A stretch of DNA of 64,000 nucleotides from Octopus sinensis. Lineage: Eukaryota. Below the pieces are notes generated by a model. That model did no database searches. It saw nothing but the letters and a program-made list of their open reading frames with translations, and was not told the DNA's origin. The translations under genes and the position numbers were made by a program. Numbering within the stretch: position 1 is the first letter of the stretch; each line of letters starts with the position of its first letter. This document shows, piece after piece, positions 4,101 to 55,088 of this stretch. The stretch spans positions 310,001 to 374,000 of the forward strand of contig NW_021835988.1 in assembly GCF_006345805.1 (NCBI RefSeq), read 5' to 3'.

Positions 4101-4224
4101 TATTTTTGAATACTATAATGTTCCTTTTTCATTTTAAAAAATAAACATACTCTTTGATTTAAAACATATTGTAGTAACTCAATGAAAAATTCAATAAGAA
4201 AAAAAACGCAAAAAAGGATAAATA

Positions 4225-5529
4225 CAGTAAAGTCTCTCGAATCCGCCGACTCTCGAATCCGCCATACCCTCGAATCCGCCAATTATAATTAATAAATTCT
4301 CTTATCCGCCATTTTTCCTAGAAAAAATTCTCAAATCCGCCAAATTCTCGAATCCGCCATATTTTTTATAATGAATCCGCCATGTGTCCTAATTTTAAAT
4401 AATTTTTTTAATTAAATTTACTGATATATAATCAATTTATTAACACGTTACATCTGTCTTTTTTGTTATATTAATGAAACGTAACTGTACAAGACTAAAA
4501 AAAATCAAAAAATTGAGATTTTGAAGTTTATTCAAACAAATAATGAATTATCTTCACTAAAATTTCTGAGATTTTTTCGAAAAAATACAACTTGCCTGTT
4601 TCTAATCAATATACAACTTGCCTGTTTCTAAGAATTTTTAATCAATTTCTATTAAAATGAAAAATGGAATTGCGAAAACAAGATAGAAAAAATTTTGCTG
4701 TTGTAGATCAATCTCCTGCACATAAGGTGAATTTCATGAAATTTACATTAGGTATTGATTGAATTAAAACAAATTGAGATGTTATTTCTACCACCTAATA
4801 CAACATCTTTTATACAGCCCATAGATCAGGGCATAATTAAATCGTATAAATGTAAATTCAATTCTCTAAAATTTTCCAATATAATTCAAAAAATTGAAGC
4901 TGGACAAACCCCTATGTTGCACACAAACAACTAAGCATAAAAGATTCAATATTATTTACATATTATGCTTGGAACAAAATAAAAAGTTCCTTAATTTTAA
5001 ATTGTTCCATTCATGCAAAATGGACTCAAAACAATGAAAATATTAATTATGAAAATCCCTTAATTGAAAATTATGAGAATATTCTGGAAAAAATGGATAT
5101 TATTGATCCGTTAGAAGAAAGTCTTTATATTGAGATTGAATATAATGAAAGTGAAGAACTTGAATTAAATAATTCAGAAAAAATAGAACAAGAAATTAGC
5201 GAAGAACCGTGTGAACAAAGTCAGAAAGTTGTTACCATTAACGAGGCTTTTATCGCTTTAAACAAATTAAAAGAGTTCTACAATCAAGAAGAATTCTTTA
5301 ATATAGAAAATCTTGAGTATATTGAAAACATTGGATCTTCAATGATCCAAACTCTAAAAAGAAACAAGTCGAAACTTACTGATTTTTTTGTTTTTAGTTA
5401 ATTATTTTGGCTTAATAATTTAAATTATTAATGGATTAAAAAATCGATAAGTCTCTCGAATCCGCCAAATTCTCGAATCCGCCAGATTTTGCCGATCCCC
5501 GAAATTGGCGGATTCGAGAGACTTTACTG
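4225..5529 (+). mobile_element. Internally deleted pogo/Tigger element with a 25-nt intron (4727-4751)
   Basis: Perfect 23-bp TIR CAGTAAAGTCTCTCGAATCCGCC with TA at 4223-4224 and 5530-5531; subterminal ctcgaatccgcc repeats; spliced DQSPAHK|VLIELKQIEMLFLPPNTTSFIQP. Confidence 0.9.
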
Positions 5530-5531
5530 TA

Positions 5532-6344
5532 TCTAGAAAACAGACAATATGGAGCCGGCTTAATAAATAAAAAGAACAACTGCTATTTGAATACCGTATT
5601 ACAAACTTTAATTTTCACTCCGCCATTTTATCAAATTTATGATTCGAGTCCAAATATTAATCTATGTTTATATTTTTCATTTAAAATTTGCAGGTCAAAA
5701 AAAATTAAAAAATGAACAATGTCTGGAATGCTCGATGAAATTACACATCGACAAGACAAAGTTAAATTGCTCCTTTTACCCAGATATAATTCTGCAATGT
5801 TTATTAAGTAACTTATTTTGTTTTAATTAATTACAGATCTCTCCAACACGATGAAAGACGATGAACAACAAGACCCGCATGAATGTTTAATATTCATTCT
5901 GGAAAAACTGAATAACAATATTAATTTTGAATATAATAATATGTATGTTAATAATAATTGTTATAGTTCTAATTCTCGGGAGACAAATATCATTTCCAAA
6001 ATTTTTGAAGGTATTCTTCAAAGTCAAGGTTGCTATTTTTATATTATTTCTTAGTTTTTTGTGCAAGTTGTGGACATTCTTCCAAACAATTTGGCCGTTT
6101 TTTGGATCTTTCTGTTTCAATAAAAGTATCATAAGAATTTAAGTTTTTATAGTATGCTTCGTCGCTCCTAAAGTCAATGTCTGCATATTTTGAAGCTGAA
6201 CATTTTAATGGAAGTAATAAATACTTCTGTGATAGGTTTTTATATTTAGATAACTTTATTCAATAGCTGTAATAATTATGTGAAGGGTACAAAGCTTTTA
6301 AGTATTAATAAGCTTCCGAAAATTTTGACTTTTCAAATCAAGAG
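5532..6344 (+). pseudogene. USP36/USP42-like ubiquitin-specific protease, disrupted at both ends
   Basis: Cys box GAGLINKKNNCYLNTVLQTLIFTPPF; QQDPHE motif; CASC...FLDLSV; YFCDSC...KLPKILTFQIKR. GT-AG introns 5648-5693, 5808-5836, 6029-6054, 6126-6152 and 6236-6266 join these in frame. No His box follows. Confidence 0.85.
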
Positions 6345-6489
6345 GTAAATAAAGACTACTTTTAAAAAAGACAACTTTTAAAAAGGTAAATAAAGACAAG
6401 AGGTAAATAAAGACTACGCTGGGGGATGCAAAGTTCGGCGTTAGTTAGTTGATTTCTTAATTATTGTTCGGTCAATAGTTATTGATTGT

Positions 6490-6825: not shown

Positions 6826-7546
6826 ATAGAATAGAATAGAATAGTGTTTATTGAGCGAAAAGAAAAAGAAAAACAAGGAAGAAATCATCGGCGGGGAGAT
6901 AAAAACAAGGCACCGAAGTGTCTCTTTCCATGCGTATCCCCAATACTAGTCATGTTTGACGACAATTCTCCAAGACCATCCGGATCGTGGGCACAGAGGA
7001 TTCTTGTGAGTCTTTTAACCTTCCGTCAAGTTGTACTCCGTAAGCCAATTTCATAGCGAAACGTCTTGTCTTTTCCAACTGTTCGATCAGGTAGTCACTC
7101 TCCTCCGTACCGTACCAGCCCTCGTAGCCATATGTGAGGACTGGCTGCACACACGTTTTGTATACGTAGATGTACGTTTCCGGATCCAGATGGAACCTGG
7201 TTAAGCTTTTGAGGATCCTCACACTCCTCTTTCTCTGATTTGCTATATGCTCTACGTACGAGCCACGACAGTTAATGGTTGCTCCCAGGTAAGAAAGATT
7301 TTTTCTTTTCGAGAGATCCATCACATAGCTACTCATCGCATATGCACAAGACTCCGCATAGCGACTCCCTCTCCGCAACCATGAAATGGTGCTCTTCTCC
7401 GGTGCTAGGGTCAAACCCTTCTCTATAGTCCACATCTTTAGCGTTGCAATGTATGATTTCAGTCGTCTCCAAGACTGCGATATCCTTTTTGAGGTATCCA
7501 TGACCAGGATATCGTCAATATAATAAATACCATTTAATATTGTCAT
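6826..7546 (-). mobile_element. L2/CR1-group LINE 3' end with (CTATT)n tail
   Basis: RT C-terminus (IYYIDD, YLGATI, YKTCVQPVLTYG) in ORF 6950-7546; ends aataaacactattctattctatt; near-identical copy at 51385-51985. Confidence 0.8.
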
Positions 7547-10192: not shown

Positions 10193-10216
10193 ACACCAAC
10201 TTCAAATTGGCAATAC

Positions 10217-11200
10217 GATGTCCTCGACTTACATGATGAGGTCCTTAAAACCTTCCCCCAAAAAAAATTAAAAAAAATTTTTCTGCGTTTTGGTCAAAAT
10301 GAACAACTACGATGTCCTCGACTTACATGATGAAGTCCTTAAAACCTTCCCCCCCAAAAAAATTAAAAAAAAAATTTTCTGCATTTTGGTTAAAATGAAC
10401 AACTACAATGTCCTCGACTTACATGATGAAGTCCTTAAAACCTTCCCCCCCAAAAAAATTAAAAAAAAAATTTTCTGCATTTTGGTTAAAATGAACCACT
10501 ACAATGTCCTCGACTTACATGATGAAGTCCTTAAAACCTTCCCCCCCCAAAAAAATTAAAAAAAAATTTTCTGCATTTTGGTTAAAATGAACAACTACAA
10601 TGTCCTCGACTTACATGATGAAGTCCTTAAAACCTTCCCCCCCAAAAAAATTAAAAAAAAATTTTCTGCATTTTGGTTAAAATGAACAACTACAATGTCC
10701 TCGACTTACATGATGAAGTCCTTAAAACCTTCCCCCCCAAAAAAATTAAAAAAAAATTTTCTGCATTTTGGTTAAAATGAACAACTACGATGTCCTCGAC
10801 TTACATGATGAAGTCCTTAAAACCTTCCCCCCCAAAAAAATTAAAAAAAAATTTTCTGCATTTTGGTTAAAATGAACAACTACAATGTCCTCGACTTACA
10901 TGATGAAGTCCTTAAAACCTTCCCCCCAAAAAAATTAAAAAAAAATTTTCTGCATTTTGGTTAAAATGAACAACTACAATGTCCTCGACTTACATGATGA
11001 AGTCCTTAAAACCTTCCCCCCCAAAAAAAATTAAAAAAATTTTCTGCATTTTGGTTAAAATGAACAACTACAATGTCCTCGACTTACATGATGAAGTCCT
11101 TAAAACCTTTCCCCCAAAAAATCAAAAAATTATTTTCTGCATTTTGATTAAAATGAACAACGCGAATGTCCTCGACATTCATGATGAGGTCCATTAAAAC
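10217..11200 (+). repeat. Tandem array of ~95-bp units, about 11 copies
   Basis: Unit aatgtcctcgacttacatgatgaagtccttaaaaccttccccccc(a)n...ggttaaaatgaacaactac, starting at about 10217, 10311, 10407 and so on to 11165. Confidence 0.95.
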
Positions 11201-11414
11201 CTTCAAGGCAAAAATCTCACGTATTAAGAATATCCTTGATGAAAACGACAGCGAGAATATTAACAATGATGAACTCCCAATTATTCGCGATAAAGAAATT
11301 CAATTCATCCTATGTTTTTCTCTTTAAAATTAAATGCATATATCATTATCGACCATGAATCAAAATTAAAGCTATTATCATATTTGACTTTGACAGAATG
11401 TGCAATCACAGATT

Positions 11415-15087: not shown

Positions 15088-17210
15088 CAGGCCTGGCCAA
15101 CCCAAATCGCATCGCGGGCCACTTTGTCCAAATGAATCCTTTCCGCGGGCCGCATATACATGTACATACTAAGGATAGATATCAAAACAACACAGATAAG
15201 ATTTTATTTAGTAAAATAGCATTCAGTCCAATTATACGTATCAATGAGAAATCTGTTTTTCTTTATCTTCACTTAATTTTTTCAAATCAACTTCACAATT
15301 ACTAGTTGCACATCTTAATTGGTTTTCTAAGTTTTTATCTGTTAAAGAAGATCTATATCTACTTTTACTAAACTTTAATTTCGAAAAGAATGATTCACAT
15401 ACGTAAGTAGATCCAAAGGAGCTTACAACTCTTTGTGCAAAAATTCTTAAGTTGGGATATTTTTCTGCAGTCACATATTTGTTATAAAAGTCAATTTTGG
15501 ATATAGTAGGATAAACAAGTCTTAGTTCACTGTTGCACTGTAGGTCAATTATTTCCGTCTGCAACGTATTTGAAACAATAGAAACGTCAACATGAAATGG
15601 AGAAGAAAATGTTTCAAACATTTTCTCATATTTTTTTAGTTCCGAGAATCGACTGTCAAATGCTGCAGCAAGATTTTTTATTTCATCAGCGTACTTGAAG
15701 AAATTTTTACAATGGCTGATTTTAAATTGATTTAGCGTTGGAAAATGTTGATCATTTCCATTTCTTATTTGACATTCAAACAATGACAATTTCATTCGAA
15801 ATGCTTTGACTTGATGGCATGCATTAGTAATCAAATTATCCTGTCCTTGTAACTCCTTGTTTAATTGATTAATTTTTTCGGTTATATCTACCAAAAGCAC
15901 AGATCTAGCATCCATTCTTCATCATTTAATTCAGTTAATGTCATTTTCTTATGCATCATAAAACTTTTGATTTCTTCTCTCAAGTCGAAAAAACGTTTTA
16001 AACATTTTCCGCGACTCAGCCATCTGACATTGGAAAAATACACAAGATCACCATAGTGAGAATATAACTCGTTCAATAATTCTTTAAACTGGCGATGTTG
16101 AAGTGCATGAGAACGAATGAAGTTTATAGTTCTTACAACCACACTCATAACATGGTTCATAGACAACACTTGCGCGCACAAATTGTGTTGATGTATCAAG
16201 CAGTGTATTACAAATAAATCATTTTTTATGCTTCTTGACTCCATCTCATCCATTATTAGCTTTACAACTCCTTTATTTCTTCCAATCATAGCCGGCGCCC
16301 CATCTGTTGTCAATCCAGCAAGGGTCTCTAAATTCGCTCCATTGTCGGATAAACATTTCATAACAGCTTGGAAAATATCTTCGCCCTTTGTAGTATCTTT
16401 CAAACTGACAAGGTTAAGCATTTCTTGTTTCACTTGAAAAGATTCGGTAACTCCACGAATATATACTACAAGTTGAGACGTGTCTGATATATCCGTGCAT
16501 TCGTCAAAGGCCAAAGAATAACTTTTGAAATATTTTATTTGATCACGCAAAGTCACCACAATTTCATTTGAAATGTCATTAACCCTGCGACATATGGTTT
16601 GACGTGACAAGCTAATGTTTGAAAACTTTTTAGTTTTATCTGGCAAAATGTCTTTCACGACAGCATCCAAACACTCTTTTACGAATTCTCCATCCGAAAA
16701 TGATTTCATTCTCTTTGAAATTATCATTGCAACAGAGTAGCTTGCTTTAACAGTATCAGAAGAAGAGTGTATCGATGAATTTAATAGTCTTTGCTGATTT
16801 CTCAATTCAGATTTAAGCGAATCCAGTTTCCTTGTTTTCAATTCCTTACTAAATTTCGCGTATTCGGAATGCTTTGTTTCATAATGTCTTCTTACATTGT
16901 ACTCTTTCACCACCGATACTTTCTCCTTGCAAATTAAACATGTTGGCTTGGAATTATGCATTATAAAAAAGTAATCTTCTTCCCAATGATTGCTGAATTG
17001 CCTGTTTTCTTCAAAATTTTCCTTTTCTTCATATTGATAACAGCTACAAAAATAGATAAACTTTAAAATTTATTAAACTTATAAAATTTATCTTTATTTA
17101 TTAAACTTAAGAAAAATTTATCTTGAATGTATTTATAGGTTAACTACATACAAAATTTCTCTCGCGGGCCGCACCAAACTCCATCGCGGGCCTTGGGTTG
17201 GCCAGCCCTG
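15088..17210 (-). mobile_element. Full-length hAT transposon (SPIN/GTF2IRD2-like)
   Basis: TIRs CAGGCCTGGCCAACCCAA and CAGGGCTGGCCAACCCAA; 8-bp TSD GCGTAAAA at 15080-15087 and 17211-17218. Confidence 0.95.
15241..17032 (-). CDS. hAT transposase with two 1-bp frameshifts
   Basis: CLIC...RHYETKH; SLAFDECTD; TTDGAPAM; HCLIH; VRWLSRG; GSTYVCESFFS. ATG at 17032. Both shifts fall in T runs, near 17015 and 15893. Confidence 0.85.
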
Positions 17211-21144: not shown

Positions 21145-22703
21145 CAGTATAACCTCCATTTGGGGCATCAATTTTGAAAAATTGCCCCAAAAATAGAGGT
21201 TTCCCCAAAAATGGAGGTCTGAAATTTTCTTTATTTTTATAAAAATTTTAATAGTTTTAGCATATTTTTCATTAATTTATAAATAAATAAAGTATTTTTA
21301 AGAACATTTAAACATGTTTTCCACTAATTTTATTGATAATTAGAGTATTTTTCAAGTAGAAAAAAATTTTTATTCTATTACACGAAAATAATCTGTTATT
21401 TTGTTTCCTGTTGCAGATTTCTTCATATGTATGCCCAATATTTTTCTAAAATTGTAATAGTCTTTTAACGCATCGGGAAACAAACGGTGAATATTCTCTT
21501 CAAGGTTATTCATTGCTGTTATCGTGTCCAAGTGTGAACAGTTGCATTCAGTTTGGTCATATATTGACTCATCATTATTTTCTTCTTCATTTTCAGCAAT
21601 TACGTCTGCAATTATCGTGTCCAAATTTTCTTTCTCACTGTTAACTAAAAAATTTGAACTAGGAATCTGTTGCCGACAGTTATTAATTGTTTCCCAACAA
21701 TTCGTTATTGTTTCAGGATTTAAATTTTGCCATGTTTTTCCAACAATTATTATGACATGACGAAGATTTATTTTTTTTAAATTAACAATTTGTAACTCAA
21801 CGTCCTCAAAATAAAGAGTAAAATCCAATAAAGCGTTAAGATAATTGGACTTGAAAGATTTAATAATACCCATGTCTAACGGTTGAATTAATGAGGTTGT
21901 ATTTTTTGGGAGAAAAAACAATTCAATGTTGGAAAGATGAATATATTTGTGACAGCTTGGGTTATCAAGTAACAAAACAATTTTTCTCTTTTGCGTAATC
22001 ATTTGTTCATTTGTAATGGTGAGCCATGTAATAAATATTTCTGATGTCATCCAACTGTTTTTAGATGATGAATATGAAACTCCATGTTCTTCAGGGTTAA
22101 AGTTTTTCATACAACGTGGGGATTTATATTTTCCTACTAACAATGGCTTGACCGGACACAGGAATAAATTCTTCCCTTGTCTTGGTGAAAGCCTCAAAAA
22201 CAATTTTATCCAATTTTTGGGATAAAGTATGAGGAGAGCGTTGAATATTTCTGGGAAAATCTGTTTGAACAGCCCCAGTATTAAAAAAATTGAGATAATT
22301 TTTTTTAATACGTGACACAGCGCCTAAAAACTTACATTAATAAAAAACCTTTACTAATTTTGTACTTATCTACAATATCTCGTTCAGTAAGATGTTTATT
22401 TTCACTTAATTCCTTGACAATTTTGATCTTTAACTCAAGACTAAGCTTACGAGCCATAACAACAAGAATACAAAAATTACACGAGGCTTCCAAATGAAAT
22501 TTTATATAATTAATTTTATTTTTAATAGCAAATATGTATATAAATTAAAAATCCTGTGCCCCACTTAGAGGTTCCGGTAATTTCTAAATTTGGAAATTAC
22601 CGCATAAAAATTATATCCTTTTCAAACTACCCCAAAAATAGAGGTTTCCCCAAAAATAGAGGTTCCCCAAGCCAGAGGTCTGCCCCAAATGGAGGTTATA
22701 CTG
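21145..22703 (-). mobile_element. pogo/Tigger element, internally deleted transposase with a 25-nt intron (22324-22348)
   Basis: TIR CAGTATAACCTCCATTTGGGGCA at both ends with TA flanks; ATG at 22457; spliced HTH YKISK|GAVSRIKK; DDE region LLLDNPSCH and IQPLDMGII. Confidence 0.9.
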
Positions 22704-24837: not shown

Positions 24838-25520
24838 TTAGCAGCAATGGCAATTCCCACGCAAGATGGCTATTGATATGCGCTGGAAAAGCCATGTCCG
24901 TTCCCGACGATCATTTCTACTTCTGCTTGCCAAATCCCCCAGTTTAATAAGGAATTTTTTAGTTCTGTAATCGAGTACTCTCGACGTCTCCAATACGATC
25001 GGGGCAAAGATATAACGGTGCAATAATGCACTATATTTCTTGACTTTTAATGTTTCCGCAAGGTTGGCTGCGGAGTCGGCTCTCCGGCTGACGTAAAGAT
25101 GTTTCCGGCGGAGAAGGTGTCCGTGCAAGTTGTGTATTGATGAGCGACTTGCCATCTTTGAAGTGGAAAGTCGTTAGGCCGTCAGGACGTTTACCATCCT
25201 CCCGAACCAGGCCGACAGGTTCCAACTGTGATGGGAATCCGGCAGTTTCAAAAGTCCGCTTGACTATGTCGTTCAGGGCAGCGTGTCGGGGAAAGCGTCC
25301 AGAGCTTCTCTGACACGATAATGGGTGCAATCCAAAGGGGTCAACGGTCGATCCACAGCGGCACCGGTGTTCTCGGCATACGTTTACCCCCAGGCGCAAT
25401 GAGACACCGATCCTTAGGAAATCGTCGTCCAATAAGGTTTGCGGTTCCCATAGGGATGGCGGTCAACCAAGTCCCCGAATATGGTTGCAAGGCAGCCAAT
25501 AAACAAGCCAAGCGATGTTG
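24838..25520 (-). mobile_element. CRE endonuclease domain, frameshifted
   Basis: HRCRCG...HPLSC, DGKRPDG, WLFQRISIAILRGN. Confidence 0.85.
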
Positions 25521-28192: not shown

Positions 28193-28264
28193 CTCCCCGA
28201 CCGGGAATCGAACCCGGGCCACCGCGATGACAACGCGGCATACTAACCATTATACTATCGGGGA
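28193..28264 (-). tRNA. trnD: tRNA-Asp (GTC)
   Basis: Acceptor TCCCCGA/TCGGGGA, anticodon arm CCGCG-TTGTCAT-CGCGG, T arm CCGGG-TTCGATT-CCCGG, downstream T run. Confidence 0.97.
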
Positions 28265-38884: not shown

Positions 38885-38955
38885 TGCGCATGCAGGGAAT
38901 CGAACCCGGGTCGCTCGCATGGCAAGCGAACATGATACCCCTACACCACAGGCGC
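38885..38955 (-). tRNA. trnG: tRNA-Gly (GCC), possibly degenerate
   Basis: Anticodon arm TTCGC-TTGCCAT-GCGAG and TTCGATT loop; one C:T mismatch in the acceptor stem and one in the T stem; T run downstream. Confidence 0.8.
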
Positions 38956-51106: not shown

Positions 51107-51384
51107 CGTGGGAGATAAAGTAAGAATTAAAAACATTAATAAATAGGTACGGGTTAAAAAGGACTTTGGAACAAATCCTTCATTGCGACTGGATAAGTTT
51201 GAGTCTCCGTATTCTTCCGCTGCAGAAATAATTAATATTTTATCGAATAATCGCGTTGAGGTAGTTTTAAATATTTTAATTTAATAGATAAAAAATTCGA
51301 AAAGAGAAATATCGACAGTACTAATGACCAGACTAAAAAAATAGTTACAGTAAAACCTTTCGAATCCGCCGAATTTTTTCAAGA

Positions 51385-51985
51385 ATAGAATAGAATAGTG
51401 TTTATTGACCGAAAAGAAAAAGAAAAAACAAGGAAGAAATCATCAACGGGGAGATAAAAACAAGGCACCGAAGTGTCTCTTTCCATGCGTATCCCCAATT
51501 TGTAGTCATAGTTGACAACGATTCTCCAAGACCATCCGGATCGTGGGCACAGAGAATTCTTGTGAGTCTTTTAACCTTCCGTCAAGTTGTACTCCGTAAG
51601 CCAATTTCATAGCGAAACGTCTTGTCTTTTCCAACTGTTCGATCAGGTAGTCACTCTCCTCCGTACCGTACCAGCCCTCGTAGCCATATGTGAGGACTGG
51701 CTGCACACACGTTTTGTATACGTAGATGTACGTTTCCGGATCCAGATGGAACCTGGTTAAGCTTTTGAGGATCCTCACACTCCTCTTTCTCTGATTTGCT
51801 ATATGCTCTACGTATGAGCCACGACAGTTGATGGTTGCTCCCAGGTAATAAAGATTTTTTGCTTTTCGAGAGATCCATCACATAACTACTCATCGCATAT
51901 GCACACGACTCCGCATAGCGACTCCCTCTCCGCAACCATGAAATGGTGCTCTTCTCCGGTGCTAGGGTCAAACCCTTCTCTATTT
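51385..51985 (-). mobile_element. L2/CR1-group LINE 3' end nested in the pogo left arm
   Basis: Near-identical to 6826-7430, with the same (CTATT)n tail. Confidence 0.88.
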
Positions 51986-52902
51986 CGTATGAGAAATTCC
52001 CGAATCCGCCAATTTCTCGAATCCGCCGCATTTTTAGAAATATATATTTTTTATTTTCTTAATTATTATTATTTTTTTTTAATTCAAAAACACTTTTACT
52101 CGAGACATTATCATTTAATTGTGTGGTTGTTCCTGTTAATTGTAATGAAACGTAATTGTACCAGATTGAAAAATTCCGAAAAACAACAAATTATTAAATT
52201 TATCGATCAAAATCCAGGGATTTCGCTTACAAGAGTGTCCGCTATCTTTTCCGAAAGATTCAGACGCGTTATTTCAAGACGATCCTTAAACGACCTTAGG
52301 AGCAGAAGGAATGTATCTGCCTTGCTTTTTTCAGAATTATCTCGGAATCCATATTTAAAGTTCAATGAAATTGATGAAGATACTATGTCATGGATTGAAA
52401 TGATGGAAACCAGAGGAGCAATTCTTAATGATTCGATTATTCTTACAAAGGCTGAAGACTTTGCGAAGAAACGTCTAATAACTGAGTTTAAAGCCAGTCG
52501 TGGATGGCTTAAAAAATTTAAAAGAAGACATGGGTTAAAATTGAAGAAACTTTATGGAGAATCTTCTACAGAGAATTTCTCAAATTCTGAAGTTAATGAT
52601 TTTCTCATTAATATAAGAGCAAAAATAAAATTATATGGTCGCGAAAATGTCTATAATGCAGATGAGACAAGATTATTTTATAAAGCTCTTCCATGTAAAA
52701 GCATTTGCAAGATCAAGAGATATGGGCATAAATTATTGAAGGATCGAATATCGATAATGTTCTGTTCAAATATGACTGGTACCGATAAACTAACACCATT
52801 CATAATTGGAAAATTCAAAAATCCTAGATGCTTTAAAAATTTTAGCTATCGAAGTTTTGTGACCTATCATAATTCAAAAAAAGCATGGATGGATTCTAAG
52901 TT

Positions 52903-53486
52903 TTTCCTTATTAAACTGGGAGATTTGGCAAGCAGAAGAAGAAATGATCATCGGGAACGGACATGGCTTTTTCAACGCATATCAATAGCCATCTTGCGTG
53001 GGAATTGCCATTCCATCTTATCCTCTGCTGCTAATTAAATACTAAATAACAGATTCAAATATGATAATTTCGTTTTTAAAAAAAATATATGTAAAAAAAA
53101 ATTTTAATAAAAAATTATAAATTTCTTTTAAGATGCCAATCTGTAGGAAAGACAGATTTTTGTTACGACGATTTATCAAATTGAAAAGCAAAAAGATATT
53201 AATAATATATTAATTAATTTCTTCAAAAAACAATTTTTTTGGGTTTTAGTGGTGCATGAATAGGCTTGAATGGCCACTTAATAGTCCAAGAAAGTTTGCC
53301 CTCAAATGCGAAAAAAGTTTTTTGATATACGAGTATTCCCCCGAGTACTGCCCCCTTATCAACGGAACATGTATAGTCCTCCCAATTAGTCGACAGTCGG
53401 TGACGAATTTGCCCATAAATATTCCCGTCTTGTACGTACATTCAAATACCAGGGAGGAACATTGGTAACACGTGACTATTTACAAA
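52903..53486 (+). mobile_element. Composite insert: CRE 3' end plus ~380 bp of unknown sequence, flanked by a 10-bp direct repeat
   Basis: ATTCTAAGTT at 52893-52902 and 53487-53496; removing the insert restores KAWMDSKLFNTF. Confidence 0.85.
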
Positions 53487-53929
53487 ATTCTAAGTTATTC
53501 AATACATTTTTGTTCGAATGGGATATCAGGTTGGCTGAAGAAAAAAACAAAATACTACTCGTAATTGACCAATGTCCATCTCACAAGATTTTTACAAATT
53601 TACAGCAAATTGAAATAATGTTTTTGCCGGCAAATGCTACGTGTTTATTACAGCCGATGGACCAAGGAGTCATTAAGACATTCAAGACGCTATTCAATAA
53701 ATTCAAATTTCTTGAAATTATTGAAAAAAATGAACTCGGAAAATCGTCATCTGAGGAATGTAAAGAAATAAACCTTAAGGATGCTTTTTTTTTAATTAGT
53801 CTATAAAAATATTCAAATTTGTCTCTCGAATCCGCCAAACTCTCGAATCCGCCGTAATTTCCCAGGTCCCAAATTTGGCGGATTCGAGAGGTTTTACTGT
53901 ACCAAAATTTTACTCTTTGTGGTTTCATT

Positions 53930-54363
53930 AATAAAATGAAATTAACTGCCCATAGGTATCGCGTGGCCCATGTGACAAAATAATCGCATATGTGGGAGAA
54001 GCATGAAGTCGAGTAACAACAACAACAATTGTCAATTGTTGGATGAAAATAAACGAACAGAGAACATGTTTTCCTGAAACTAATTCAAAAAAAGAATCTG
54101 AATTAATTGATAAGCATGTTTTAGCTTTAATGGATCTTGAAATAAACGGAATTGAGGATAATGATACTTTGTATAATGGAAATGATGAAATTGAAGGGTC
54201 CGACTTAAAAGATTCAATGAGAATAATCAATGATCTTGAAACTTCCTTATTCAACACTTGCCCTGAAGGACTCAAAGAATACTATGAATTCAAGATAAAA
54301 ATGTCGAAGATTCTAAGAAATAAATATAATACTGGATTCAAAATAACTGATTATTTTTCATAG
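53930..54363 (+). mobile_element. pogo transposase C-terminal fragment
   Basis: Ends KITDYFS, like KITDYFRVIE in the 21145 element. Confidence 0.6.
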
Positions 54364-54471
54364 AATAAATTAATTCCTCTTTTTTAATACGAAAAAACAT
54401 ATTTTATTATTAAAAATACAAATATTTGCGTTTGAAATATAAAAATTATATATACCTCTATCTTAGGGGCA

Positions 54472-55088
54472 ATGGGAGAAATCAATTAAAATGTTTCAGT
54501 CATTATTAATAATGTTTATTTAAAAATACATGATTCTTCAAACCAATAATTAATTATAGAAATTAAAGGATCAAGGAACCAATAAACATAGAAATAATGA
54601 AAAAAACCATAAATAACAAGTAAAAACTATTCATCGCAGAAAAATATAAAATAAATATTTTTTAGATATAGAAAATGTATAAAAATGGGAGAAATCAATT
54701 AAAATGCTTCAGTCATTATTAATAATGTTTATAGAATGATTAAAAATACATGATTCTTCAAACCAATAATTAATTATAAAATTAAAGGATCAAGGAACCA
54801 ATAAACATAGAAATAATGAAAAAAACCATAAATAACAAGTAAAAACTATTCATCGCAGAAAAATATAAAATAAATATTTTTTAGATATAGAAAATGTATA
54901 AAAATGGGAGAAATCAATTAAAATGCTTCAGTCATTATTAATAATGTTTATAGAATGATTAAAAATACATGATTCTTCAAACCAATAATTAATTATAAAA
55001 TTAAAGGATCAAGGAACCAATAAACATAGAAATAATGAAAAAAACCATAAATAACAAGTAAAAACAATTCATCACAGAAAAATATAAA
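54472..55088. repeat. Tandem repeat of ~219 bp, about 2.9 copies
   Basis: atgggagaaatcaattaaaatg at 54472, 54685 and 54904. Confidence 0.95.

What the first reader, a model, noticed from the sequence alone, without database searches (positions are those of the whole stretch)
4727..4751. pogo intron absent from a sister element in the same window
Splicing aag|GTGAATTTCATGAAATTTACATTAG|gta gives DQSPAHK-VLIELKQIEMLFLP. This aligns without gaps to DQCPSHK-IFTNLQQIEIMFLP in the intron-less relative at about 53570. AGGT occurs at both junctions, like a 4-bp duplication.
Basis: seen in the sequence. Interest (0 to 1): 0.7.

Follow-up and report, generated by a model that had tools for sequence, protein, structure and literature searches.

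The report
Tiny 25-base intron in pogo transposon
A dead copy of a pogo "jumping gene" carries a 25-base insert that looks like one of the ultra-short introns typical of its host, most likely a dicyemid parasite of octopus; this is a small, unproven addition to known biology, because no second copy or RNA could be checked.

Summary
GTGAATTTCATGAAATTTACATTAG sits at 4727-4751, and it is unique in the window. Removing it joins DQSPAHK to VLIELKQIEMLFLPP in phase 0. The joined protein is gap-free against the closest intronless relatives.

The decisive context is the host. The neighbouring USP gene has five homology-verified GT-AG introns of 26-46 nt. A GH47 gene on a related contig has four of 25-26 nt. 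Among animals this intron regime is reported only in dicyemids and myxobolid myxozoans, so a 25-nt GT..TAG unit is a normal host intron. Only 0.35% of simulated random 25-nt insertions form such an exact unit.

The claim stays unproven:
- Element e1 (4225-5529) is a dead, internally deleted copy.
- The only two other reachable family copies both have deletions across the site.
- No transcripts were available.
- The "sister" at 53567 is a cousin: 54% amino-acid identity, with DNA similarity only at the element ends.
- The AGGT repeat at both junctions is suggestive at most.

Best reading: a fossil of a real ultra-short spliceosomal intron, gained in the e1 lineage (confidence 0.7). Main rival: a private insertion in this copy (0.24).

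It is a new member of known kinds, since intron-bearing pogo elements and dicyemid mini-introns are both described. In passing, contigs labelled Octopus sinensis look dicyemid.

The parts
4225..5529 (+). Element e1: an internally deleted, non-autonomous pogo copy, flanked by a TA duplication at 4223-4224 and 5530-5531
   Evidence: Perfect 23-nt terminal repeats. The C-terminal half of the Pfam DDE_1 domain matches at E = 2.9e-13. DNA identity to the copies in L001 and L002 is about 97-98%.
4225..4247 (+). 5' terminal inverted repeat, CAGTAAAGTCTCTCGAATCCGCC
   Evidence: It is followed by subterminal CTCGAATCCGCC repeats up to about 4365.
5507..5529 (-). 3' terminal inverted repeat, identical to the 5' repeat
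4474..4726 (+). Remnant of exon 1. The start ATG is at 4474. A frameshifting indel lies near 4497-4503. An internal deletion of roughly 640-690 nt has its junction, with filler and a duplicated ACAACTTGCCTGTTTC, at about 4604-4650. The exon ends ...VVDQSPAHK, with AAG at 4724-4726.
   Evidence: Alignment to the L001 and L002 copies; translations.
4727..4751 (+). Candidate ultra-short spliceosomal intron: GTG...TAG, 25 nt, phase 0, 24% G+C. It contains the 14-nt palindrome AATTTCATGAAATT.
4760..4762 (+). In-frame TGA reached if the 25 nt is retained (...AHK-VNFMKFTLGID*)
   Evidence: Translation of frame 1.
4752..5401 (+). Exon 2: VLIELKQIEMLFLPPNTTSFIQPIDQG... to ...KLTDFFVFS, with the stop TAA at 5399-5401. 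It carries a 1-nt deletion (GGG to GG) at about 4905-4907 relative to the L002 copy.
51348..53899 (+). It carries nested retroelement fragments.
53567..53629 (+). Intronless homologous site in e2 (DQCPSHK|IFTNLQQIEIMFLP; CAC AAG|ATT)
21904..21966 (-). Intronless homologous site in a third, more distant pogo, e3 (DNPSCHK|YIHLSNIELFFLP). Its ORF is 21370-22203.
5546..6345 (+). Host USP/UCH gene fragment next to e1. It has five GT-AG introns: 5648-5693 (46 nt), 5808-5836 (29), 6029-6054 (26), 6126-6152 (27) and 6236-6266 (31). It serves as the yardstick for host intron size.
   Evidence: The spliced product matches Pfam UCH at 2e-25 in one stretch. It also aligns contiguously to USP36 (PDB 8bs9), E = 1.6e-21.

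Best explanation
The 25 nt at 4727-4751 is a fossil of a genuine U2-type GT-AG intron in the transposase gene of one lineage of pogo DNA transposons, the 'e1 family'. This family has CAGTAAAG terminal repeats, a TA target duplication and a DD30D catalytic triad. It lives in an animal genome whose normal introns are about 25-30 nt, most likely a dicyemid.

In the autonomous parent element, the transposase of about 500 aa would be encoded in two exons. The host spliceosome would remove the 25 nt in phase 0. The intron sits between the second catalytic Asp (VVDQS) and the third (QPIDQG). Unspliced RNA would stop 11 codons beyond the donor site. It would give a protein with the DNA-binding domains but no complete active site.

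Closer and more distant relatives (e2, e3, P0017 and 11 others) are uninterrupted at this site. The intron would therefore be a gain in the e1 lineage, possibly by insertion at an AAG|GTA site.

What is shown: the sequence features, the colinearity with relatives, the host intron regime, and the death of this particular copy. What is inferred: that the parent element carried the 25 nt, that it was spliced, and any regulatory role for the unspliced product.
For: 1. Exact GT...TAG ends and phase 0. Removal gives a gap-free match to the closest relatives.
2. It is the only GT-AG choice that keeps the catalytic Asp and the family's spacing.
3. The host uses such introns. Five introns of 46, 29, 26, 27 and 31 nt in the adjacent USP gene are verified by contiguous alignment to Pfam UCH and to USP36. 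Four introns of 25, 25, 26 and 26 nt lie in a GH47 gene on contig L002, which also carries an e1-family copy. The spliced GH47 product matches Pfam Glyco_hydro_47 at 1e-101.
4. The literature agrees. Dicyema introns measure 26.2 +/- 1.9 nt (PMC2222250) with a median of 27 nt (PMC6543705). The splice signals in D. japonicum are reduced to 'GTa' and 'AG' (PMC13644364).
5. Only 0.35% of simulated random 25-nt insertions form an exact GT..AG unit.
6. Apart from this site, the family's reading frame is continuous when pieced together from e1, L001 and L002. The second frameshift in e1 is a 1-nt deletion absent from L002.
7. The 25-mer is not copied from elsewhere in the element.
8. There is precedent. 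Drosophila pogo has a 55-nt intron joining two ORFs (bioRxiv 10.1101/2023.05.27.542554, citing Tudor et al. 1992). Arabidopsis Lemi1 has a putative frameshift-bridging intron (PMC1636448). A pogo survey reports elements with 'one or two ORFs' (PMC7386202).
Against: - Only one copy carries the site, and that copy is dead. It has an N-terminal frameshift, an internal deletion of roughly 640-690 nt with filler DNA about 80-120 nt upstream of the 25 nt, and a 1-nt deletion.
- The two other reachable copies have deletions spanning the site. L002 lacks exactly 11 + 25 + 12 = 48 nt. That fits either history equally well.
- There is no RNA evidence.
- No protein in the 5.8-billion-sequence collection contains the spliced or the unspliced junction.
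- The third intron base is G, while the D. japonicum logo favours A. GTG does occur in 1 of the 9 verified host introns.
- The dicyemid identity of the host is inferred, not proven.
Confidence: 0.7

Rival explanations
1. The 25 nt is a private insertion. It would be filler DNA acquired by this one dead copy, for example during the same error-prone gap repair that made its internal deletion, and it happens to have GT and AG ends. It was never part of a working transposase gene. In a host whose splice signals are little more than GT and AG it might still be spliced.
For: - Copy e1 shows templated filler at its deletion junction 80-120 nt upstream.
- No second copy with the 25 nt was found.
- The segment has a 14-nt perfect palindrome. 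Arms this long appear in 1.5% of shuffles, which hints at a non-ordinary origin.
- The 4-nt direct repeat AGGT is the kind of microhomology or duplication seen at repair insertions.
Against: - Exact GT..AG ends arise in only 0.35-0.7% of simulated insertions.
- The length falls in the narrow host intron class.
- The 25-mer has no more similarity to the element than shuffled versions do.
- The other indels separating e1 from L002 are mostly 1 nt, plus one of 12 nt and one 17-nt repeat unit.
Confidence: 0.24
2. The 25 nt is an 8-codon in-frame expansion of a variable loop combined with a 1-nt frameshift, not an intron.
For: Distant homologues vary by up to 3 residues at this loop. The +25 shift and the later -1 deletion return e1 to its original frame.
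Against: - Read through, the frame hits TGA at 4760-4762.
- The conserved FLPPNTTS...QPIDQG motifs stay out of frame with the upstream part.
- The closest relatives have exactly the spliced length.
- The -1 deletion is absent from L002.
Confidence: 0.03
3. The 25 nt is an assembly or sequencing artefact, or the footprint of another transposon that inserted and excised.
For: The palindromic core. Homopolymer-type 1-nt indels elsewhere in e1 could be read errors.
Against: - A 25-nt non-repetitive insertion is not a typical read error.
- The palindrome is central rather than next to the AGGT repeats. That does not fit the layout of duplication, transposon-end remnants, duplication (read from the sequence).
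- RNA folding of the region is not unusual, z = 0.58.
Confidence: 0.03

Closest known systems
Drosophila melanogaster pogo
   Same: It is a pogo-superfamily DNA transposon. A single short intron must be spliced to fuse two reading frames into one transposase. Internally deleted copies predominate, and some of them have lost the intron (bioRxiv 10.1101/2023.05.27.542554, citing Tudor et al. 1992).
   Different: Its intron is 55 nt, matching fly minimal introns, and it is proven by transcripts. Here the segment is 25 nt, is unproven, and lies between the second and third catalytic Asp. Whether the position matches the fly intron was not tested.
Arabidopsis Lemi1 (pogo-like) putative intron
   Same: A frameshift in a pogo-like transposase ORF is proposed to be bridged by splicing. 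The proposal rests on splice-site consensus in a single or low-copy element (PMC1636448).
   Different: It is a plant element with a plant-type intron, at amino-acid position 385. Allelic variation at the acceptor site was available as a test there.
Ultra-short spliceosomal introns of dicyemids (Dicyema japonicum, Dicyema sp.)
   Same: Length of 25 nt against 26.2 +/- 1.9 nt (PMC2222250) and a median of 27 nt (PMC6543705). GT/AG are nearly the only signals (PMC13644364). The candidate has the same size and ends as nine verified introns in this window and in L002.
   Different: Those introns lie in host genes, mostly at evolutionarily conserved positions. This one lies in a mobile element, at a site where all relatives examined lack an intron, which implies a recent gain.
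P element third intron (IVS3) retention
   Same: An unspliced transposase mRNA gives a truncated, DNA-binding, catalytically dead protein. This is a functional analogy drawn from general knowledge, not tested here.
   Different: P is a different superfamily, and its regulated tissue-specific retention is demonstrated. For e1 this role is pure inference.
Pogo element on JGI metagenome contig Ga0307474_10030559 (L003, protein P0017)
   Same: Closest full-length relative found, at 51% amino-acid identity around the site. It has nearly the same terminal repeat (CAGTAAAGTCTGTCAAATTCGCC), similar subterminal repeats and a TA duplication.
   Different: It is uninterrupted at the homologous site (CAT AAA|ATC), and its host is different and unknown.

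Membership tests
pogo superfamily of IS630-Tc1-mariner DNA transposons | Short terminal inverted repeats (40 bp or less in most families) and a TA target-site duplication | tested here: met
   Perfect 23-nt terminal repeats at 4225-4247 and 5507-5529. TA lies on both sides, and joining the flanks restores a continuous host ORF. Criteria are taken from PMC7386202.
pogo superfamily of IS630-Tc1-mariner DNA transposons | Transposase with an HTH_Tnp_Tc5 DNA-binding domain and a DDE_1 catalytic domain | tested here: met
   Element e1 keeps only the C-terminal half of DDE_1 (E = 2.9e-13). Family copies P0016/L002 and P0007/L001 carry PF03221, and P0016 also carries PF03184.
pogo superfamily of IS630-Tc1-mariner DNA transposons | DDxD catalytic triad with 29-56 residues between the last two Asp | tested here: met
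   With the 25 nt removed, the Asp of VVDQS and the Asp of QPIDQG are separated by 30 residues (counted). This falls in the Tigger range DD29-36D (PMC7386202). Both Asp columns are conserved in at least 90% of the 14 aligned sequences. With the 25 nt kept, the third Asp is out of frame.
U2-type GT-AG spliceosomal intron of the ultra-short (dicyemid-type) class | GT at the 5' end and AG at the 3' end | tested here: met
   GTGAAT...ATTAG.
U2-type GT-AG spliceosomal intron of the ultra-short (dicyemid-type) class | Length within the host's intron size class | tested here: met
   25 nt, compared with 46, 29, 26, 27 and 31 nt in the USP gene and 25, 25, 26 and 26 nt in the GH47 gene.
U2-type GT-AG spliceosomal intron of the ultra-short (dicyemid-type) class | Removal restores an open frame that is colinear with homologues, while retention truncates the protein | tested here: met
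U2-type GT-AG spliceosomal intron of the ultra-short (dicyemid-type) class | Present in independent copies or orthologues of the same gene | tested here: inconclusive
   Only two other family copies were reachable, and both have deletions across the site. Public viral, metagenome and prokaryote collections gave no match.
U2-type GT-AG spliceosomal intron of the ultra-short (dicyemid-type) class | Spliced transcripts exist | not testable with these tools
   No RNA-seq access. No protein with the spliced junction exists in the protein collection.
Introner-like or transposon-generated introns | Many near-identical intron copies across genes, with target-site duplications supplying the splice sites | tested here: not met
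   The 25-mer is unique in the window at up to 3 mismatches, and no exact copy occurs in 35.6 kb of related loci. Only 64 kb + 35.6 kb of the genome could be searched, so the test is weak. The AGGT repeat is present but is compatible with chance.

The most novel reading that the evidence does not exclude
The 25 nt records a very recent de novo intron gain inside a mobile element. About 21 nt of filler DNA would have been inserted at an AAG|GTA site, duplicating AGGT. It would have been spliceable at once because the dicyemid spliceosome needs little more than GT, AG and a length of about 25 nt. Young transposon families in dicyemids would then be natural reporters of how introns are born in animals with minimal splice signals.
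Probability: 0.2. Interest if true: 0.6.

Novelty: new member of a known kind. Interest (0 to 1): 0.35.

Why it matters
If real, it shows that a DNA transposon resident in an ultra-short-intron animal carries a host-style 25-nt intron at a site where all its relatives have none. That would be a dated intron gain with clear polarity, in a lineage otherwise known for shrinking conserved introns. It would also make transposase production depend on splicing.

The value is modest. Intron-bearing pogo elements and dicyemid mini-introns are both already described, and the evidence rests on one dead copy.

The by-product may be more useful in practice. Contigs deposited and annotated as Octopus sinensis carry genes with 25-26-nt introns, so they probably derive from its dicyemid parasite.

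Tried and rejected
1. More family copies. The junction pattern and the terminal or subterminal repeat patterns gave no match in the viral, JGI metagenome and GTDB genome collections. Two protein searches found only two annotated family fragments, P0007 and P0016.
2. The third protein search, with the host USP protein, returned nothing at my threshold of 1e-15. The threshold was too strict and the search was wasted. The organism could therefore not be named from a host protein.
3. An exact look-up of a window ORF to find the source record found nothing on record.
4. A possible second mini-intron (20 nt, GTTGCAC...CTAAG near 4910-4930) was considered and rejected. The L002 copy shows that e1 simply lost one G at about 4906.
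5. A mini-intron between the two hAT ORFs at 15888-15915 was considered and rejected. It is a 1-nt frameshift.
6. A templated origin of the 25-mer from elsewhere in the element was rejected. Its best local alignment scores no better than shuffled versions.
7. A recent tandem duplication of the adjacent exon was rejected. By inspection of the sequence, neither neighbouring 25 nt resembles the segment.
8. A functional RNA hairpin was rejected, with folding z = 0.58.
9. A transposon excision footprint was rejected, because the palindrome is not next to the AGGT repeats.
10. Using the 48-nt deletion in L002 to decide whether the 25 nt is ancestral was rejected as uninformative. The positional coincidence is about equally likely under either history.

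Full report
**What is there.** The window is AT-rich (28-40% G+C) and is dominated by transposon remains: reverse-transcriptase, hAT, Tc1/mariner and pogo ORFs.

The finding lies in element e1, at 4225-5529. This element has perfect 23-nt terminal inverted repeats (CAGTAAAGTCTCTCGAATCCGCC), subterminal CTCGAATCCGCC repeats and a TA duplication. Its remaining coding sequence matches the C-terminal half of the Pfam DDE_1 domain, so it is a pogo-type DNA transposon.

The 25-mer GTGAATTTCATGAAATTTACATTAG sits exactly at 4727-4751 and is unique in the window. Removing it joins ...VVDQSPAHK to VLIELKQIEMLFLPPNTTSFIQPIDQG... in phase 0. AGGT flanks both junctions. The intronless counterpart DQCPSHKIFTNLQQIEIMFLP is at 53567-53629.

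**Is the colinearity real?** I aligned the spliced e1 fragment with 13 pogo/Tigger-type proteins. It shows no gap at the junction relative to its closest relatives: P0017 (51% identity), e2 (46%) and several others.

Four GT..AG pairs of 15-60 nt keep the frame open. Only 4727-4751 also keeps the second catalytic Asp and the family's spacing. With the 25 nt removed, the last two catalytic Asp are 30 residues apart. That lies inside the DD29-36D range reported for Tigger-type pogo elements (PMC7386202). With the 25 nt kept, translation stops at TGA 4760-4762.

**The host context changes the picture.** Right next to e1 is a ubiquitin-hydrolase (USP) gene fragment. Removing five GT-AG segments of 46, 29, 26, 27 and 31 nt gives a 213-aa product. 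That product matches Pfam UCH in a single stretch (E = 2e-25). It also aligns contiguously across every junction with human USP36 (PDB 8bs9; E = 1.6e-21). The genome in this window therefore really does splice introns of 26-31 nt.

Among animals, such introns are reported only in dicyemids and myxobolid myxozoans (PMC13644364). Dicyema introns measure 26.2 +/- 1.9 nt (PMC2222250), with a median of 27 nt (PMC6543705). In D. japonicum the splice signals are reduced to 'GTa' and 'AG' (PMC13644364). The D. japonicum genome is 36.7% G+C and 49% repeats, and it was sampled from Octopus sinensis (PMC6736024).

**Related copies.** Protein searches found only two annotated fragments of the e1 family. 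Both are named as Octopus sinensis proteins:
- P0007, 'jerky protein homolog-like'
- P0016, 'tigger transposable element-derived protein 4-like'

Both lie on contigs of assembly GCA_006345805.1. At DNA level these copies are 97-98% identical to e1. Several other repeats are also shared between those contigs and the window at 93-97%. They therefore come from the same kind of genome.

Contig L002 also carries a GH47 alpha-mannosidase gene. Its exons are joined by GT-AG introns of 25, 25, 26 and 26 nt, and one further junction stayed unresolved. The spliced product matches Pfam Glyco_hydro_47 at E = 1e-101.

The e1 family therefore lives in an ultra-short-intron animal. Given the octopus label and the known host-parasite pair, a dicyemid is the natural inference. 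This is inference, not proof.

**Why the intron claim is still unproven.** Element e1 is dead. It has an N-terminal frameshift. It has an internal deletion of roughly 640-690 nt, whose junction holds duplicated filler (ACAACTTGCCTGTTTC appears twice). It also has a 1-nt deletion (GGG to GG) near 4906, which explains its second frameshift.

The L001 copy has a large deletion covering the site. The L002 copy lacks exactly 48 nt: 11 nt of exon, the 25 nt, and 12 nt of exon. I considered whether this favours an ancestral 25 nt. The positional coincidence is about equally likely under either history, so it does not help.

No copies were found in the viral, metagenome or prokaryotic genome collections. 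No RNA data could be examined.

**Weighing chance.** I simulated random 25-nt insertions drawn from the window and placed in the family's coding sequence. They form an exactly removable GT..AG unit in 0.35% of cases. For tandem duplications the figure is 0.7%.

Several further points support the intron reading:
- The length matches the narrow host intron class.
- The 3' TAG matches the YAG ending of all nine verified host introns.
- A GTG start occurs in 1 of those 9.
- The family ORF, pieced together from the three copies, is otherwise continuous.
- The 25-mer shows no templated origin inside the element.

Two oddities remain:
- The segment has a 14-nt perfect palindrome, which 1.5% of shuffles match. 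No significant RNA structure goes with it.
- The AGGT repeat is expected by chance in only a few percent of introns, judged from nine host introns.

Both could hint at how the segment arose. Neither argues against splicing.

**Interpretation.** The most likely reading (0.7) is a fossil of a real phase-0, 25-nt spliceosomal intron that was present in the autonomous parent of the e1 family. The site is uninterrupted in all of the following, so the intron would be a gain in the e1 lineage:
- e2, at 54% amino-acid identity to the family
- e3
- the second pogo on L002
- P0017/L003, a full element with nearly the same terminal repeat
- all more distant homologues examined

The main rival (0.24) is a private filler insertion in this copy. 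In a host with such minimal splice signals, an insertion of that kind might be spliced anyway, so origin by insertion and function as an intron are not exclusive.

The idea that intron retention yields a truncated, DNA-binding regulator is only an analogy with the P element.

**Comparison with known systems.** Intron-bearing pogo elements are known:
- Drosophila pogo has a 55-nt intron that fuses two ORFs (bioRxiv 10.1101/2023.05.27.542554, citing Tudor et al. 1992).
- Arabidopsis Lemi1 has a putative frameshift-bridging intron (PMC1636448).
- A survey of the superfamily notes elements with one or two ORFs (PMC7386202).

Dicyemid mini-introns are also well described. This finding combines the two. 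It is a new member of known kinds, not a new kind.

It is partly supported. The intron reading is reasonable. However, 'sister element' overstates the relationship, and the AGGT 'duplication' is not evidence of a target-site duplication.

Noticed in passing
L001 (GCA_006345805.1 VCDQ01013315.1, 142950-163483); L002 (VCDQ01009169.1, 1-11146), GH47 gene at L002 4641-6076 (-): Contigs deposited and annotated as Octopus sinensis share transposon families with this window at 93-98% identity. One of them carries a GH47 gene with 25-26-nt GT-AG introns (Pfam Glyco_hydro_47, 1e-101). They look like dicyemid parasite DNA inside the host's reference assembly, with transposon fragments named as octopus proteins (P0007, P0016). 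The window itself is probably dicyemid too.
   Followed up: partly
window 4223-4224 / 5530-5531, USP gene 5546-6345: Element e1 is inserted at a TA inside the open reading frame of the USP gene. Joining the flanks gives a continuous ...NAKKDKYLENRQYGAGLINKKNNCYLN.... After ...TFQIKR at about 6345, the gene runs into three copies of AAGAGGTAAATAAAGAC and then a retroelement fragment (6828-7426). This USP copy therefore looks disrupted or truncated.
   Followed up: partly
window 4604-4650: The internal-deletion junction of e1 contains filler. ACAACTTGCCTGTTTC occurs twice, separated by AATCAATAT, which echoes the TTAATCAATTTC just downstream. This is the signature of abortive, template-switching gap repair after transposon excision.
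   Followed up: no
window 51348-54363: Element e2 is a composite.
- Retroelement fragments are nested at 51382-51983 (97% identical to 6828-7426).
- More retroelement sequence lies from about 52904 to 53480. Its first ~110 nt are 95% identical to 24846-24954.
- The apparent 3' terminal repeat (53877-53899) sits in the middle of the transposase reading frame.
- The frame resumes at about 53960-54363 (...AWSRVTTTTIVNCW...KITDYFS*).
- No terminal repeat was found after 54363.

The structure is unexplained.
   Followed up: partly
L003 264-2172 (JGI metagenome 3300031718, Ga0307474_10030559): This is a full pogo element with almost the same terminal repeat (CAGTAAAGTCTGTCAAATTCGCC), similar subterminal repeats and a TA duplication. 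It encodes the closest full-length relative, P0017. It sits in an unrelated metagenome contig (30% G+C) next to a ribosomal protein L13 gene. This terminal-repeat family is therefore not confined to the window's organism, and horizontal spread is possible.
   Followed up: partly
window 4730-4743: A perfect 14-nt palindrome, AATTTCATGAAATT, lies inside the 25-nt segment. It extends to an imperfect 20-nt palindrome starting at the GT. Arms this long occur in 1.5% of shuffles. No significant RNA fold goes with it. Its meaning is unknown.
   Followed up: yes
L002 about 5714-5736 (-): One exon junction of the GH47 gene (...YALTKDE to IYFHKLKDC...) could not be closed with a GT-AG intron of 14 nt or more. 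GTGAGTCCAG... starts there, but no suitable AG follows. It may be a non-canonical acceptor, a sequence error or a pseudogene lesion.
   Followed up: no
window 10214-11204; 54471-55088: Two satellite-like tandem arrays. One is 95 nt x 10.4 copies, also present at about 80% identity on L001 13361-14512. The other is 219 nt x 2.8 copies, just downstream of e2.
   Followed up: no
window 15241-16961 (-): A hAT transposase is split into two overlapping ORFs by a single-base frameshift in ...WMLDLCF|LVDITEKIN.... I checked it as a possible second transposon-borne mini-intron, and it is not one.
   Followed up: yes
window 28193-28264 (-), 38885-38955 (-): Two tRNA-like genes (Rfam RF00005, 64 and 47 bits) lie embedded among retroelement ORFs. 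I did not determine whether they are real tRNA genes or SINE heads.
   Followed up: no
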